A program made the translations under genes and the position numbers. A stretch of 64,000 nt of DNA, from assembly GCA_002104945.1 (NCBI GenBank), contig MCFH01000004.1, positions 1,178,001 through 1,242,000 of the forward strand, read 5' to 3'. Below, in pieces: positions 18,809-26,181 of this stretch. The first letter of the stretch is position 1. Each line of letters opens with the position of its first letter. This DNA is from Piromyces finnis finn (lineage: Eukaryota > Fungi > Neocallimastigomycota). The notes under the pieces were generated by a model. That model had not been told where the DNA came from and made no database searches. It was given only the letters and a program-made list of their open reading frames with translations.

Positions 18809-21588
18809 CTATTTGAAGAATTTTTCTTTAATATCTGGGTATTTTTTAATAACATCAAGTTGGGCTTTAGCAGCTTCTCTGCACATAACAGCTTGTTGTA
18901 AATCCATATTAGTTCTAGCTACTTCAATAGCTTTACCATATTCTTCAACAGCTTCTGCGATATCATGCTTTTGTAAACAAATTTGGGCCAATTGAACGTG
19001 AGCAATATCACATTCTGGGTCAACTTCAATAGCTTTTCTAACAAATTTTTCAGAGTTAAGTAAATCCATTTTTTGTTGATGTAAAATAGCCTTATTAACA
19101 TATGAGAATGGAAGTTGTGGTGCAACCTTTGATGCTTTATCAAATTCATTCATAGCATCATCAAATCTTTGTAAGTCCATTAAAATTTCACCATAATAAT
19201 TATGTAAATCTGGAGAGTTAGGGAATTTTTTACTTGCATCTTCAAATGTCTTAATAGCAGTTGGAGTGGAACCATTACGATAGTATGCAACACCTTGTTG
19301 AATATAACTGAAAACAAAGGTTGGATCTAATTCGGCACTCTTTTTGTAATCTTCAATAGAATCTTCATATTGGTTTAACATAAATTTAATATGTGCTCTG
19401 TGGTAATAAAGATCTGGATCATCAGAAGAAATCATTGCAGCTCTTATAAAATTTAATGTTAAATATAAATATTAATATTTATGCCATAAAAATTTAAGTA
19501 TGAACTCGAAATTATTGTATTATCATGATCTTCTTACCTGTCAAATAATTCTAATGATGGCTCAAGTTCACCCTTTTCTAATAAACAAGAGGCTAACTTA
19601 ATATGAGTTTGAATATTTTCTGGGTCAAGCTTTAATGATTCTTCAAAATCAGCTATAGCAGCATCCATTGAATTAGCTAAATAAAGGTATGTACCTCTTA
19701 AACGAAGAGCACCAGCTTTCATCTTGTCATTTTTAATACCAGCTTGAATAGCATGATCAACCTTTTCTGATGCTAATTTATAATTCTTTAATTTTGTGTT
19801 TTCTAAAGCATCCAAGAAGAGAGATTCACCTTGTTCTTCATTCCAAATATTAGAATTTGGTTCATCATAAAAATCTTCTTTTGCTTTATTATTAATAAGT
19901 ATAGTTTATTTTTTGTTAGACATTTATTATCATATTGATGATTTTTTAAATTTATTTATCAGTATTATTATTATTTTTCTTTTATTAAAAAAAAATAAAA
20001 TAAAATAAAAGGAAAAAGATATACATACTTCTGAATGAATCTAAATATGTTGTAATAAAAGTATCTGATGGAAGTTTTGGTTTTCTATTCTTTATGATTT
20101 CATTAGTAACTTCTTCAGAATAATTCTTTAATACTGTTTCATTAGAAGCAACAATAGAATTATCAGAAAATTCATCTAAAATACACAAAGCAGTATAATC
20201 ATTTAAAGCTTGTTCTAGATTTTTGGTTTTTTCATATGCTTGAGCTCTTCTTTTTAAAGCTTTGATATAATTTGGATTTAATTTTAAAGCTAATTTAAAA
20301 TTATAATAATATATTTAATAATGAAAGTAACTTTTTTTTTTAATTATATATGATTTATTGATATTAATTTTACCTTCATTGCAATCAGCAATGACTTCTT
20401 CCATTTTTCCTAAATTATTATAACAAGCAGCTCTATTTCCATAATATACACAGTCTGGGAAGAGTTCAATAGCTTTTGTATATTGTTTAATAGCTTTATT
20501 ATATTTTTTAGACTGGAATAACTTATTTCCTTCGTCTTTTGCTTTTTTAGCTAGCTCTTTACGTTCCTAAATAATATTTAATATATCGCAATAAAAAGAT
20601 TTCATAATTTAAAAACTGATATATATTTAAAAAGCAATAGACAGAAAATTTCAAATCTCCATAATTTTAGATTTAACATTTATATCTTATACTATTGAAT
20701 AAAATAACATACAGTTTCAGTTAAATTAAGATACTCATTTTTTGGTTCAGTATCATCATTATCTTCTTTTATTTCTTCTAATGGTGGTGGTAAATCATCG
20801 GTTTCTGTGGAACCTTCTTTTTTATCATCATTAAATCCATCAATAAATGGATTTAATTCTTTAACTTCTGATTCAGATAATTTGAAATTTGAGTTGTAAG
20901 TTGGTGTTGATAAAATTACATCGTCTAATTTATTATTTTGGTCCGGATTTTCTGTAGCATTACTATTTATAACATTTGAAGATTCCTTCTTTTTTCCTTT
21001 ACTCTTTGCTATTTAAATTTTTAATTTATTAATTTTTCACAAATTATTTAAAAATTATAAAATGTATTCAAGAATTAAATTAATAAATATATATATATTT
21101 AATTAATTTTAAAAGTTCATTTAAAGTATTATTAAGATATTTATAGATAAATAATTAACTTTATTATGTATTCTTATATTTTTAATCATTCCAATAAATT
21201 TATATATAAATGTATATATTATATATTTACATTTAGACTTCTTTTTATTCTTCTTTTTATTTTTTTTTGGTGTACTTAATAAAACTTTAATATTTGATAG
21301 TATCTCTGGATTTTTATAAACATTGTATGCTGTTGCTATAAATGCTGAGGTAGCTAAAAATGCAGAAATCTGTTTATAATTTAAAGATGAACTAGCAACT
21401 TTTGCAACAGTACTAGTGGTTGGTGCTACAACATTTTCTACCATATCCGAAGCATTTTGATTTATAACTTCTGGAATTACAGCATCTGCAACTGATTCAG
21501 CTACGTTATTTAGAGGTTCTGTAAAATTAACATCGACGTTAGGTGCAGACCAACTTTGAGCAATAGCTCTAGCTTCAGATCTATACAT
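18809..21588 (-). CDS. TOM70: Organellar (mitochondrial-type/hydrogenosomal) import receptor Tom70, multi-exon TPR protein
   Basis: Exon 21588-21231 encodes a TM segment (ISAFLATSAFIATAYNVY) plus a Lys run. It splices in phase through 21008-20713 to KAKDEGNKLFQSKKYNKAIKQYTKAIEL..YYGNRAACY..VIADCNEALKLNPNYIKALKRRAQAYE, then LPSDTFITTYLDSFR and DPDLYYHRAHIKFMLNQY..ELDPTFVFSYIQ, typical of Tom70 clamp and core TPRs. Confidence 0.88.
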
Positions 21589-22410
21589 TCTTTAAATTTA
21601 TATGTATCTTTTTATTTAATTTTATTTATTTATTTATTGAATAAAAATGTTTACACTTAAAGTGGAATTTTTAAATTAATTTTAATTATATTTAATAAAA
21701 AAAAAATAATTTATCGAGGTTATTTTATAATTAAATATATTATTAAGTTATTAATATTCAATTTGCTTACCAGCAATAACAAATCAAATCTTCAATTTAT
21801 TTTTAAAAACAAATAATGAAATTTTACTCTATTAAACTCTATTAGTTCAAAATTCAAAAATCTAATTTTAAAATAATTTCATTTATTTTTTATTTTTATT
21901 TTTAAAAAATAATATAGTTATATAATAATATAGTTAAAAATTAAAGAGAAATTTTATTATTTTTTATCCAATGCAATTGTTTTATTTTTGTTATAATTCT
22001 TTTTTATTTTTTTTAAAAATTTCAAAATTTTATTTCATTAATATATTATTTCAATATATAAATCATAATTAATAACATATATTATTTTTGTTACACATTA
22101 TTTTCAAATATGATTGGCTATAAATTATTGAAAGATTAATTTTTTTTAACTATTATTTTATTAATTATTGACAGTAAAGAAGGAAATAAGTGAAAATATA
22201 ATAAATATATCATATTTACAATTTATATACTTTTTTATTTTTCTATTTAAAAATATTAACTTTGGTTATAAGATAGTAATAAATGATGTTATTTTGATAT
22301 ATTAATAAAATATAAAATTACATTATATATATTTGGTAATATTAGTATTTTATATTGCAATTAAAATTCAAAAATATATTTGAATTTAAAGATATTTAGA
22401 AAAAAATTCA

Positions 22411-23269
22411 TTATTTAAGAATTTTTAACACAGTCCAAGATACAATGAAAACTAATACCTAATAATATTTTGTAAGAAAAAAAAGATTGCATATTTATTA
22501 ATTTTCTATTTTGTTTGTGTATTTATTTATCTTTTACTTACAAAATTAAAGACAAATATATAATATGGATATGACCTTTTATCCGACCCAATGTTCGGTT
22601 TGCATTTGTACAAATCAAGTAAACACATCTTTAATTTCATTTTTATTTAATATATATTCAATTATTGATTTTAATTACAAATTAAAATTTAACTAAATAA
22701 CTTAGAAATATCAAAATAATAAACTTACTTTGTCATCTTCAAAACTCCAACTATACTTTCTTTCTTCTAAAATAACAGAACACCCTTTACAAATAGGATA
22801 TTTATCAATTATTGGATCTACAATGCATGTCTAGTATTCATATTATTAATTTTTTCATATAATTACATTATTTTTATTAATTTATTATTTCAATTACTAT
22901 TTTATATATTTTTATAATCCTACTTTATTATATTCTTTTCCATAATATGTTCCCATATATTTAAATTCAATTGTAAATCCAATACAAAATTTTTTATCTA
23001 TGAAATCTTTGCATAGCTCATTATCTATGATACATGACTATAAATATAATATACTTAGATTTTATATAAAAAAACATATAAAATTATATAAAATAATAAT
23101 TTACTTGTTCATTTTCCCATCCTAAATTAAATTTTAATTCTGAATTTTCTTCAGCTGTAATAATACAAGTTTTACATACTGGTAAAATATTAGAATTGCC
23201 GGATGCAATTTTTATTAACAATAGTATAATGAATACTGATTTTCTATTTAAAATATCAATTATCTTCAT
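22411..23269 (-). CDS. 171-aa secreted protein: signal peptide, three degenerate fungal dockerin (CBM10/NCDD)-like repeats, C-terminal transmembrane helix
   Basis: Five phase-0 exons (23269-23105, 23037-22924, 22830-22729, 22628-22542, 22458-22411) with GT-AG ends give an open frame. Repeats: LPVCKTCII..LGWENEQSCIIDNELC; KFCIGFTIEF..YGKEYNKTCIVD; YPICKGCSVI..WSFEDDKMCLLDLYKC. Tail: YYIFVFNFVLVFIVSWTVLKILK-stop. Confidence 0.75.
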
Positions 23270-24831
23270 ATATTAATTATTATCAAGTATTATTTTGATT
23301 GTGTTATTTTTATAATTATTTCAAATTTTACATATTTCTTGTTTGGATAATTTTTTTATTCAATAAACTTTTTTTCGAAAAAAAATTATTTTAGTGTACT
23401 AATTACTTAATAATTAATTTAATTTTAATATAGAAATTACTTATTAAAATTGTAGTAAATCTAATTTGTTTTAAATCTTTAATACATGATTTTTTTATTA
23501 ATAATTAATTTTTTTTAATATTGTATCATATTAAAAAATGGTAAAAAAATGAATGAAAAAATATATAATAAATAGAATTATGATATAATAATAAACTTTA
23601 TAGATTAATTTATTTAAAAAATATTATCCTTGTTTTTTTATCGAATTATTCTTTTTATTAGATTAAATAATTTAGAAAAGATTAGACTAGGGTTAGGTTC
23701 AACTATACATTACATGAATTGGTCTAAATTAGTATTTGTTTTAATGTCAACAAACAAACAAAAAAAAAAAAAACTAAAATATATAACACAATAATTCTGG
23801 TACAATTCATATATATATAATCCTATATTTTTAATTATAAGGAATATAATATTGAAAATCTTAACAAAGATCATTTAAAGCATTCTATTAAGTTTCTATC
23901 TAATTTTATTAAAATCCTGATGTGATTACATATATAAGATTTGAAAAGAATTTTTTAAATATTTATTTATAATTAATATTATAAATATTTGATATTATAT
24001 ATATTAATAATCTAAAATAAAAAAATTTATTTTTTGAATTATATGAATTGTTATAAATTGTTATAAAATAGATATCTTTTGAATAAATATTAAAATATAA
24101 AAATTGTTATAAAAATATATATAACCTTTTATTAAATAAAATAACAAAATAAAATAATAAATATATAAATATATATTTAAATTTTTTTAAAAAATATAAA
24201 GCTTTATTAAAGTATAATGTTTTTAAAATGAAAAATTAATTTTAATTTTATTAAAAACATATATATAATATCTTAAAATACATTTATAGAATTATAATAT
24301 TTGTTTATCTATTTATTTAATATAAAATTTTAATAATCTTAAATTTATTTATAGCGTTGATATTACAAAATTTAGATTTTACTTATTAAAATTCAATTTA
24401 TAATTCTTTTAAAAATAACTTATTTAAATAGAAATTGTAATAATTAATTATATTATAATTAAAATTAAATGAGTTATAAATATAATTTAAAGTATTTTTA
24501 GAAATAGATACTTTTTTAAAATATGTTTTAATTTTTTAGATTCTATTTTTAAATAGTTTATTCTATTAATATCTATTATTATTAATTAAAACTAATAATA
24601 AAAAAATAATAAAGAATTAACAAAAAAAAAAAAAGTATATAAAGAAACAAATTTTCGTTTCTTTTAAAAAACTATCCTTTTTATAAAGGTGTGTCTTATA
24701 TTACAGGGTAATATATAGATAAAGGAGCAATATAAAAATTAAATGTGTTAAAAGCTAGAAAAAAGCAAAGTATAGTAAAATCCCCAAAATTTAGCTAAAA
24801 AAAAAAGATACCCAAAGAAAAAGAAAAAAAA

Positions 24832-26181
24832 ATGACTGCAATTGATACTTATTCAAATACAGCAAATTTCTTTATCACTAAATTAAATGATAAAGAAGAA
24901 GAACTTGAAATAAATTATAAGAGCCCAAAAAATTATTTATTAAAGGATTTTAATAATAAAAATAACACTTTTATTGTAAAATCTGATTCGACAAATACAC
25001 TTTGCAATTGTAAGGAAGATATTCTTCAGCCCACAGGAATAGTATGGTCAGTAACAAATGAACAAGGTTATCGTAAAAGAAATGGAGAAAAGACAAATTT
25101 ACATGAAAGATGCGAAGATTTTCATTGGCCACAAAGAAATGATAATGCATTTAAACGAATTCATCCAATAAATGGGAAATCCATTAATATGTATATTCTT
25201 GCTGATGGACATGGTGGTCATGAAGCTCCACAAATATTTCTTGCAAGAGCTTGTGCCGCATGTTTTAAAGTTATGGAAAGTAAAAATTGGAATTTATCAA
25301 TGCCTGATCATCAAGAGGAATTAAGAAGTATTCTTACTGATACTTATATTTCATTAGATAGACAATTCTGTGAAGAAAAGGTAGCAGAATATGAAGAATA
25401 CAACAGAAATGGAAAACAAGGTAAAAAGCCAGTAGATGATGGTTGTACCCTTATTGTCAATATAGTATATGATGGTTATTTAATAAATGTTAATACTGGT
25501 GATTCAAGAACAGTTTTAGGAAGTAAAAAGGAAAAGTCACACTTTTTACATAAAAAGACGTTTGAATTTGTTCCAACTTTTTCTTCTTTAGACCAAAGTC
25601 CTGATCATCCAGAAAAAGCATATAACGTTTCGCATAACGGAGGTATATTCTTATCTTCAGGAGGAATTCCTCGTAAAAGACCAAACATTGAACCTTTTGA
25701 AAAGAGAGGTATGGTTACATATCCTGAACTTGTAGGAACTCGTATCTATCGTCCATCTAATAAACGAATTGAGGAATTAGGTATTAATCATTTGATGACA
25801 CTTAATATGGGAGGTTCTATGGGAGATCTTCTCTTCAAAATTGAACCAGCTGTAATTTCATGTCGTCCAGACGTTTCAATTTTAAAAATTGATCGTTCAG
25901 TTGATAATATTCTTTTAATCGCTACTGATGGTATCTGGGATCACCTTAATTGGCAAGAACCAGAAAAGCAAAACGAAAAGATTATGAGTTACATTAGTAA
26001 GCAAATGGGTGAAAATGTTGAAATTAATGAAGAACTCTTAAATAAGATTTCCTCTAAGTTAGTTAAACGTGAAAATAACCTTGAACTTTACGAACCACGT
26101 CAACGTTACGATGACTGTACAGCTTTCTTAGTTTATCTTCCAGCCGGTTCTGAAGAACAAAACTTAGAAGCCTCTAGCTAA
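24832..26181 (+). CDS. PP2C/PPM-family Ser/Thr protein phosphatase (449 aa, intronless)
   Basis: Metal-binding and family motifs RCED, ILADGHGG, DDGCT, NVNTGDSR, SMGD, LLIATDGIWD and YDDCT in the canonical order. Confidence 0.9.
   Translation: MTAIDTYSNTANFFITKLNDKEEELEINYKSPKNYLLKDFNNKNNTFIVKSDSTNTLCNCKEDILQPTGIVWSVTNEQGYRKRNGEKTNLHERCEDFHWPQRNDNAFKRIHPINGKSINMYILADGHGGHEAPQIFLARACAACFKVMESKNWNLSMPDHQEELRSILTDTYISLDRQFCEEKVAEYEEYNRNGKQGKKPVDDGCTLIVNIVYDGYLINVNTGDSRTVLGSKKEKSHFLHKKTFEFVPTFSSLDQSPDHPEKAYNVSHNGGIFLSSGGIPRKRPNIEPFEKRGMVTYPELVGTRIYRPSNKRIEELGINHLMTLNMGGSMGDLLFKIEPAVISCRPDVSILKIDRSVDNILLIATDGIWDHLNWQEPEKQNEKIMSYISKQMGENVEINEELLNKISSKLVKRENNLELYEPRQRYDDCTAFLVYLPAGSEEQNLEASS

What the first reader, a model, noticed from the sequence alone, without database searches (positions are those of the whole stretch)
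22411..23269. Non-catalytic, membrane-anchored triple dockerin-like protein: candidate cellulosome tether/adaptor
Seen: only exon 1 is in the ORF track. Splicing five exons gives signal peptide + three degenerate repeats of the fungal dockerin pattern (P-x-C-xx-C ... W/Y-x-x-E ... C-[IL]-[IVL]-D) + a ~20-residue hydrophobic C-terminal helix ending in Lys, with no catalytic module. Knowledge: fungal dockerins normally ride on secreted CAZymes and bind scaffoldins, and large scaffoldins are the described membrane-anchored part. Inference: a small dockerin-bearing membrane protein could anchor scaffoldins or cellulosomes to the rhizoid surface in the reverse orientation, or act as a surface receptor. 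I know of no description of this architecture but cannot search.
Basis: partly seen in the sequence, partly recalled or inferred. Interest (0 to 1): 0.7.

Follow-up and report, generated by a model that had tools for sequence, protein, structure and literature searches.

The report
Small membrane-anchored triple dockerin-like protein
A real, conserved five-exon gene of anaerobic gut fungi encodes a roughly 170-residue protein with a signal peptide, three worn-down dockerin modules, a membrane-anchoring tail and no enzyme domain. It could hold cellulosome scaffolds at the cell membrane, but that role is untested.

Summary
On the minus strand, five exons (23269-23105, 23037-22924, 22830-22729, 22628-22542, 22458-22411) with GT..AG phase-0 introns encode 171 aa.

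- **Conservation.** The same five exons, with identical intron positions, sit between the same TPR and PP2C neighbours in a metagenomic Piromyces, Anaeromyces robustus, Neocallimastix lanati and N. cameroonii. In the last three the public annotation already calls a 169- or 168-aa product with exactly these ends. Against the Piromyces orthologue dN/dS is 0.19, and exons are 71-87% identical against 49-56% for introns.
- **Copy number.** The gene is single-copy in this genome, which is Piromyces finnis by assembly statistics.
- **Dockerin identity.** Repeat 3 is a dockerin homologue: CBM_10 is its only Pfam hit in all four species (16-22 bits, below the cut-off of 23), and hhalign gives 91.5%. 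Repeat 1 links to dockerins through a variant subtype (92.8%, then 97.2%). Repeat 2 is only weakly supported.
- **Cysteines and tail.** All ten cysteines and the hydrophobic tail are conserved.
- **Not settled.** I could not distinguish a transmembrane helix from a GPI signal.

The cellulosome-tether role is plausible but untested. The stalk of about 12 residues argues against reach through a cell wall. No RNA reads could be laid, and the joined protein was never searched or folded. The scan has two unchecked notes of other anchored dockerin or CAZyme proteins in this genome.

The parts
23105..23269 (-). Exon 1 (55 codons). Holds the start codon, a signal-peptide-like hydrophobic segment (residues about 11-22), and the first 29 residues of dockerin-like module 1 (P-x-C-K-T-C ... 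G-W-E-N-E).
   Evidence: four-species alignment; best 12-residue hydropathy 2.7-3.6; module 1 against variant dockerins, Prob 92.8%.
23038..23104 (-). Intron 1: 67 nt, GT..AG, phase 0, GC 0.07.
   Evidence: same position in all orthologues; 56% identity to the orthologous intron, against 73% for exon 1.
22924..23037 (-). Exon 2 (38 codons). Holds the end of module 1 (x-C-I-I-D plus a trailing Cys) and the core of module 2, which is the most degenerate module but the best conserved.
   Evidence: pN 0.05; against module 3, Prob 31%, P 5e-4; single copy in the genome.
22831..22923 (-). Intron 2: 93 nt, GT..AG, phase 0, GC 0.11.
22729..22830 (-). Exon 3 (34 codons). Holds the end of module 2 and the core of module 3, which is the most canonical dockerin (Y-P-x-C-x-G-C ... 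S-W-x-x-E-[DN]).
   Evidence: CBM_10 E 0.013, 16.4 bits; the same sole family in three orthologues, up to 22.1 bits; Prob 91.5%, P 8.7e-7 against canonical dockerins of this genome.
22629..22728 (-). Intron 3: 100 nt, GT..AG, phase 0, GC 0.11.
22542..22628 (-). Exon 4 (29 codons). Holds the end of module 3 (x-C-L-L-D plus a trailing Cys), a short stalk with the invariant R-S-Y-P-Y motif, and the first 8 residues of the hydrophobic tail, including a conserved polar position (N/T/D/D).
22459..22541 (-). Intron 4: 83 nt, GT..AG, phase 0.
   Evidence: Read-through products differ between species, whereas exon 5 is conserved.
22411..22458 (-). Exon 5 (15 codons plus stop). Holds the rest of the hydrophobic tail, ending K-x-L(-K). 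It is either a membrane anchor or a GPI signal.
   Evidence: V, W, K and L invariant in four species; mean hydropathy 1.6-2.4; annotated orthologues end at this stop.

Best explanation
This is a genuine, single-copy gene that is conserved across Neocallimastigomycota.

**Product.** It enters the secretory pathway through an N-terminal signal peptide. It carries three tandem disulfide-knotted modules derived from fungal dockerins (CBM10 type). It is held at the membrane by a C-terminal hydrophobic segment, most likely a single helix with a 3-4 residue cytoplasmic end.

**Most likely mechanism (inferred).** The dockerin-derived modules bind the same kind of partner as ordinary fungal dockerins, namely the cohesin-like repeats of scaffoldins. 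The protein would then be a membrane-proximal docking or escort site for scaffoldins. That would act on wall-less zoospores, at growing tips, or inside the secretory pathway, rather than as an outward tether through the mature wall.

**Shown versus inferred.** Shown: the gene model, its conservation, the dockerin ancestry of modules 3 and 1, the lack of any catalytic domain, and the conserved hydrophobic tail. Inferred: signal-peptide cleavage, helix versus GPI, the ligand and the site of action.
For: **Gene model.**
- Splice sites and GC contrast support the exons.
- The five-exon structure is identical in a metagenomic Piromyces (L007), A. robustus (L037), N. lanati (L041) and N. cameroonii (L042), always between the TPR gene and PP2C.
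- The annotated products of 169 and 168 aa have exactly these ends.
- dN/dS is 0.19, and exons are 71-87% identical against 49-56% for introns.
- The gene is single-copy.

**Dockerin ancestry.**
- CBM_10 is the only Pfam family hit by exon 3 in all four species.
- hhalign of module 3 against canonical dockerins gives 91.5%.
- Module 1 against module 3 gives 79%.
- Module 1 against the variant dockerins of L002 gives 92.8%, and those against canonical dockerins give 97.2%.

**Cysteine pattern.** The pairs behave as in dockerins. The extra Cys after CC and the trailing Cys after C-G-I co-occur in genomic dockerins. In this protein they are both present in modules 1 and 3 and both absent in module 2. 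All ten Cys are invariant.

**Anchor.**
- The hydrophobic tail is conserved in sequence, not only in character.
- The literature holds that fungal cellulosomes are thought to be membrane-anchored by a single terminal helix, and that scaffoldins occur with and without transmembrane anchors (PMC10066034; PMC8262932).
- Dockerin signal was reported on zoospore surfaces (PMC8262932).
Against:
- No exon piece reaches the CBM_10 gathering score of 23 bits (best 22.1).
- Modules 1 and 2 score poorly against canonical dockerins directly (Prob 1.6% and 0.9%).
- The module 3 profile finds no solved dockerin by sequence.
- Several aromatic positions of canonical dockerins (Y of G-Y-P, the W before C-G-I) are replaced in modules 1 and 2. 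Cohesin binding may therefore be lost.
- The stalk is only about 12 residues, too short to cross a wall.
- A polar or acidic residue sits inside the hydrophobic segment.
- Nothing tested binding.
Confidence: 0.4

Rival explanations
1. The gene and ectodomain are the same, but the C-terminal hydrophobic stretch is a GPI-attachment signal that is cleaved. The mature protein would then be lipid-anchored on the outer leaflet or transferred to the wall glucan.
For: - The layout is classical: a signal peptide, then a hydrophobic stretch ending 1-4 residues from the C-terminus, preceded by a polar spacer with small residues (N-I-G-S-D in the window, N-T-G-S-D in L007).
- The transamidase subunits Gpi16, Gaa1 and Gpi8 are encoded in this genome.
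- An acidic residue inside the stretch in Anaeromyces and Neocallimastix is awkward for a helix.
Against: - The tail is conserved at specific positions (V, W, K and L are invariant, and R-S-Y-P-Y lies just before it). That is unusual for a cleaved signal.
- The small-residue rule at omega and omega+2 is not met in A. robustus (my reading).
- There is no Ser/Thr-rich stalk of the kind wall-linked GPI proteins usually have.
- No GPI predictor could be run.
Confidence: 0.25
2. The modules keep the dockerin fold but have changed partner. The protein would be a surface lectin or receptor subunit (for cellulose, chitin, a glycoprotein or another membrane protein) that is unrelated to cellulosome assembly. 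Signalling would go through a partner recruited by the polar residue in its helix.
For: - Key aromatic positions are replaced in modules 1 and 2.
- The least dockerin-like module (2) is the most constrained (pN 0.05; 89% identity).
- The gene is single-copy and syntenic among housekeeping genes, unlike the expanded CAZyme-borne dockerins: at least 561 candidate dockerin sites in the first look at this genome, and the 150 that were scored all passed the cut-off.
- A polar position is conserved in the hydrophobic segment.
- The Pfam family itself covers 'cellulose or protein binding'.
Against: - Module 3 retains the Y-P and S-W-x-x-E-N signature of cohesin-binding dockerins.
- No alternative ligand is indicated by any result.
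- A cytoplasmic end of 3-4 residues cannot signal by itself.
Confidence: 0.3
3. The model is an artefact. The locus would be non-coding or a decayed gene, and the exons would be a chance assembly in AT-rich DNA.
For: Only exon 1 is an ORF of notable length. No RNA reads were laid. No annotated P. finnis protein was retrieved, although records of the window's own genome are withheld.
Against: Exon lengths, phases and splice sites are conserved in three genera. dN/dS is 0.19. The ten Cys are invariant. The annotated orthologues have exactly the same extent.
Confidence: 0.03

Closest known systems
Fungal dockerin (non-catalytic docking domain, CBM10-type, Pfam PF02013; solved for Piromyces equi Cel45A, PDB 1E8P and 2J4M)
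   Same: Modules of about 36-40 residues occur in tandem. Module 3 keeps the signature Y-P-(C)C-x-x-(C) ... W-x-x-E-N ... C-x-[IL], and module 1 keeps it in the variant form. The cysteine pairs covary as in genomic dockerins.
   Different: - The first Cys and one Cys of the CC pair are lost in all three modules.
- Several aromatic positions are replaced.
- Each module is split by a phase-0 intron just before its last Cys.
- No exon piece reaches the Pfam cut-off.
- The modules are not attached to an enzyme. They are followed by a membrane anchor.
Fungal scaffoldins (ScaA family) with a terminal transmembrane helix
   Same: Both are secretory-pathway, non-catalytic cellulosome-type proteins thought to be held at the membrane by a single terminal hydrophobic helix (PMC10066034; PMC8262932).
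   Different: Scaffoldins are large and carry cohesin-like repeats that receive dockerins. This protein is about 170 aa and carries the dockerin side of the pair, so the polarity of any anchoring would be reversed. No similarity to scaffoldins was tested.
Bacterial cellulosome anchoring systems (for example, the type II dockerin of CipA binding the cohesins of SLH-anchored SdbA, OlpB and Orf2p in Clostridium thermocellum)
   Same: The logic is the same: a cohesin-dockerin pair fixes the complex to the cell surface (PMC12484212).
   Different: In bacteria the surface-fixed partner carries cohesins and the scaffoldin carries the dockerin. The folds are unrelated to the fungal modules, and anchoring is by SLH or sortase rather than by a helix or GPI.
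Variant dockerins of the gene at G000:C1:302416-305550 (L002)
   Same: They share the P-C-C-x-S-C ... G-W-E-N-N form that module 1 resembles most (Prob 92.8%). One copy also has an intron next to the last Cys.
   Different: They keep all six Cys. They sit at the end of a long Asn/Ser/Thr-rich protein, and no hydrophobic tail was seen.

Membership tests
Fungal dockerin / CBM_10 (PF02013) | Significant match to the family profile at or above the curated cut-off (23 bits). | tested here: inconclusive
Exon 3 scores 16.4, 22.1, 18.8 and 17.8 bits in the four species. CBM_10 is its only hit, covering profile positions 6-32 of 36. Exons 1 and 2 have no hit, or E 0.44.
Fungal dockerin / CBM_10 (PF02013) | Profile-profile homology to bona fide dockerins of the same genome. 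| tested here: met
   Module 3: Prob 91.5%, P 8.7e-7. Module 1 is linked through the variant dockerins: 92.8%, then 97.2%. Module 2 reaches only Prob 31% against module 3 and 0.9% against canonical dockerins.
Fungal dockerin / CBM_10 (PF02013) | Conserved cysteine framework (first Cys, CC pair, Cys of C-G-I; optional extra pair). | tested here: inconclusive
   The Cys of the CC pair and the Cys of C-x-[IL] are kept in all modules. The optional pair is kept in modules 1 and 3. The first Cys and its presumed partner are absent from all three. The disulfide connectivity is my inference.
Fungal dockerin / CBM_10 (PF02013) | Dockerin fold (as in 1E8P and 2J4M). | not tested
   Every module is split by an intron, so no module has a contiguous reference. 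The joined protein was not folded. Sequence search of the PDB with the module 3 profile found no dockerin.
Fungal dockerin / CBM_10 (PF02013) | Binds scaffoldin cohesin-like repeats. | not testable with these tools
   This needs a binding assay, or a complex prediction with intact modules.
Type I single-pass membrane protein | Cleavable N-terminal signal peptide. | tested here: inconclusive
   A hydrophobic core at residues about 7-22 is present in all four species (mean hydropathy 2.7-3.6 over 12 residues) and is followed by small or polar residues. No SignalP was available.
Type I single-pass membrane protein | A hydrophobic helix of about 20 residues near the C-terminus with a basic cytoplasmic end. 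| tested here: inconclusive
   About 22 hydrophobic residues span exons 4 and 5 and end in K-x-L(-K). The stretch is conserved. It has a polar or acidic residue in the middle, and no TM predictor was run.
GPI-anchored protein | C-terminal signal (small omega region, polar spacer, terminal hydrophobic stretch) plus the transamidase in the genome. | tested here: inconclusive
   The layout fits in both Piromyces sequences but less well in A. robustus. Gpi16, Gaa1 and Gpi8 are present. No GPI predictor was available.

The most novel reading that the evidence does not exclude
The protein would be the missing reverse-polarity anchor of the fungal cellulosome. In that reading it is a dedicated, single-copy, membrane-fixed triple dockerin. 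It captures cohesin-bearing scaffoldins that lack their own anchor and so fixes cellulosomes to the membrane of wall-less zoospores and growing tips. Alternatively it escorts scaffoldins through the secretory pathway. Either version would account for the dockerin signal reported on zoospore surfaces.
Probability: 0.2. Interest if true: 0.8.

Novelty: new variant of a known kind. Interest (0 to 1): 0.55.

Why it matters
How fungal cellulosomes are held on the cell is unsettled. The literature assumes that some scaffoldins carry their own terminal helix, yet many scaffoldins have none.

A conserved, single-copy, enzyme-free protein that presents dockerin-type modules from the membrane would add a second anchoring or assembly route that can be tested directly. 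It is small enough to express, and its three modules are natural variants for mapping what a fungal dockerin needs in order to bind.

It also shows that Pfam-based counts of dockerin proteins in these fungi miss divergent modules. Examples are this gene and the variant dockerins at L002.

Tried and rejected
**Reads**
Those places were sent to no tool afterwards.
- Runs X1 and X2 hold 0.62 and 0.46 of the words. Their kind (RNA or DNA) is only guessed, so nothing is concluded from them.

**Searches that found nothing**
- Two metagenome scans, with exon 2 and exon 1 alignments, matched patterns but confirmed nothing by tblastn.
- The word search with exon 1 found no candidate.
- The phmmer search of exon 1 against 1.84 billion representatives gave one hit only, the exon-1 ORF of the Piromyces orthologue. 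This does not show that P. finnis lacks an annotated model, because clusters are represented at 50% identity and records of the window's own genome are withheld.
- PDB sequence searches with exon 3 and with the module 3 profile gave only chance-level hits.
- Rfam has nothing in 21600-24800.

**Dead ends**
- The syntenic interval of Piromyces sp. E2 is a 2,180-base run of N, so presence there cannot be told.
- N. californiae has no orthologue within 10 kb of its PP2C copy, where synteny is broken.
- A genome scan for the R-S-Y-P-Y-[YF] motif gave 16 hits against 14 in the control, which is chance.

**Left out on purpose**
- I ran no complex prediction, because no intact module has a contiguous reference.

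Full report
**What is there**

The window is very AT-rich. It belongs to a 56,455,805-base assembly in 232 contigs. Those figures match the ones published for Piromyces finnis (56.46 Mb, 232 scaffolds; PMC12341934). A paralogue of a neighbouring gene is also named P. finnis in the protein collection.

- Exon 1: 23269-23105
- Exon 2: 23037-22924
- Exon 3: 22830-22729
- Exon 4: 22628-22542
- Exon 5: 22458-22411

All four introns begin GT, end AG and are phase 0. Exon GC is 0.21-0.29, against 0.07-0.16 in the introns and 0.11-0.13 in the flanks. Only exon 1 shows up as an ORF. The product would be 171 aa. Neighbours are a TPR-repeat gene downstream and a PP2C phosphatase upstream. No Rfam family lies in the interval.

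**Is the gene real?**

Direct RNA evidence could not be had. Those places were not sent to any tool afterwards.

Comparative evidence settles the question instead. A full phmmer search with exon 1 found one protein, the exon-1 ORF of an orthologue on 23 metagenome contigs. That locus (L007) has the same five exons between the same PP2C and TPR neighbours.

Through the PP2C orthologues I fetched the syntenic loci of other gut fungi.
- Anaeromyces robustus carries an annotated 169-aa gene there, with a faint CBM_10 mark.
- Neocallimastix lanati and N. cameroonii var. constans carry an annotated 168-aa gene (accession identified).
- My exon-by-exon mapping reproduces those annotated starts, stops and lengths exactly. 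Intron positions and phases are identical in all species.

Against L007, exons are 71-87% identical while introns are 49-56% and flanks 43-46%. Summed over exons, dN/dS is 0.19. Exon 5 is conserved (V, W, K and L invariant), whereas the read-through past donor 4 is not.

The gene is single-copy in this genome. The Piromyces sp. E2 interval is an assembly gap, and N. californiae has lost the synteny.

**Are the repeats dockerins?**

Searched exon by exon, exon 3 hits CBM_10 and nothing else in all four species. The E-values are 0.013, 2.2e-4, 0.0023 and 0.005, with scores of 16.4-22.1 bits against a cut-off of 23. The match stops at profile position 31-32 of 36 because the rest lies in exon 4.

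| Comparison (profiles of the within-exon parts) | hhalign Prob | P |
|---|---|---|
| Module 3 vs nine canonical dockerins of this genome | 91.5% | 8.7e-7 |
| Module 1 vs canonical dockerins | 1.6% | 0.031 |
| Module 1 vs module 3 | 79% | 1.6e-5 |
| Module 1 vs variant dockerins of L002 | 92.8% | 4e-7 |
| L002 variant dockerins vs canonical dockerins | 97.2% | 4.5e-11 |
| Module 2 vs module 3 | 31% | 5e-4 |
| Module 2 vs canonical dockerins | 0.9% | 0.062 |

The L002 variants come from another gene of this genome. They are missed by Pfam.

A further argument comes from the cysteines. In genomic dockerins an extra Cys two or three residues after the CC pair goes together with a trailing Cys a few residues after C-G-I. 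That held in 11 of 12 cases seen. In this protein both are present in modules 1 and 3, and both are absent in module 2. The first Cys and one Cys of the CC pair are missing from all three modules. All ten cysteines are invariant across the three genera. This fits three dockerin-type knots, each with one disulfide removed. The connectivity itself is my inference.

The canonical profile finds the solved P. equi dockerins 2J4M and 1E8P. The module 3 profile does not.

**The ends of the protein**

All orthologues start with a hydrophobic core (mean hydropathy 2.7-3.6 over 12 residues) followed by small or polar residues. The sequence is otherwise poorly conserved, as signal peptides are.

After module 3 come about 12 residues with an invariant R-S-Y-P-Y motif. 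Then about 22 hydrophobic residues span the exon 4/5 junction and end K-x-L(-K). This could be a terminal helix or a GPI signal.
- For GPI: the layout fits, and Gpi16, Gaa1 and Gpi8 are encoded in the genome.
- For a retained helix: the tail is conserved at specific positions, and the small-residue rule fits poorly in A. robustus.
- A polar or acidic residue (N, T, D, D) is conserved in the middle of the stretch.

I put helix at about 60% and GPI at about 25%. No predictor was available, and the two halves of the tail were assessed separately.

**What it probably does**

There is no catalytic domain. The annotated orthologues stop at exon 5.

The literature I could read holds three relevant points:
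- Fungal cellulosomes are thought to be anchored by a single terminal helix (PMC10066034).
- Scaffoldins occur with and without transmembrane anchors (PMC8262932).
- Dockerin signal is intense on zoospore surfaces (PMC8262932).

A membrane-fixed dockerin-type ectodomain could therefore dock scaffoldins at the membrane. The stalk is too short to cross a wall, so I favour action on zoospores, at tips or in the secretory pathway.

A rival is that the modules, which are much altered at aromatic positions, now bind something else. The least dockerin-like module is the most constrained. No binding test was possible.

**Novelty**

My four literature searches turned up no paper describing a small anchored dockerin-only protein in these fungi. 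The protein does exist as an unnamed gene model in three public genomes. Two unchecked notes of this scan report other membrane-anchored dockerin or CAZyme proteins in this genome. I rate it a new variant of a known kind.

**Left out**

All searches were exon by exon by reference. No complex prediction was run.

Noticed in passing
L002 = G000:C1:302416-305550 (dockerin-like copies at L002 1207-1323, 1540-1641 plus the next exon, and 1899-2012): A gene ends in three variant dockerins of the form P-C-C-x-S-C ... G-W-E-N-N. It follows a long Asn/Ser/Thr-rich region. Pfam CBM_10 does not report these copies at E up to 1, yet hhalign gives 97.2% against canonical dockerins. Pfam-based counts of dockerin proteins in this genome are therefore probably too low.
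   Followed up: partly
L037 7267-8061, L036 5071-5834, L007 3805-4578, against window 23270-24831: An APH-family (PF01636) gene lies between the orthologue and PP2C in A. robustus, Piromyces sp. E2 and the metagenomic Piromyces. In the P. finnis window the spacer is only about 1.5 kb and has no ORF of 50 aa or more.
   Followed up: no
L036 2829-5008 (Piromyces sp. E2, KZ150817.1): The syntenic interval where the orthologue should lie is a 2,180-base run of N. Its absence from that genome's annotation therefore means nothing.
   Followed up: yes
L037 (A. robustus) introns of the orthologue: All four intron lengths (87, 114, 87, 297) are multiples of three. This is probably chance, about 1 in 81.
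   Followed up: no
L033 = G000:C167:78229-80336: A canonical dockerin at the end of a ricin-type-lectin-like protein ends W-C-L-L-D-x-x-x-C. That is the same ending as module 3 of this gene, in place of the usual W-C-G-I.
   Followed up: no
They lie in the first exon region of the neighbouring TPR gene and were not examined further or sent to any tool.
   Followed up: no
window 18809-21588 (-) and 24832-26181 (+): The flanking genes are a multi-exon TPR-repeat gene and an intronless PP2C phosphatase. The PP2C is 82-91% identical across gut-fungal genera. Their order around the small gene is conserved in Piromyces, Anaeromyces and two Neocallimastix assemblies.
   Followed up: partly
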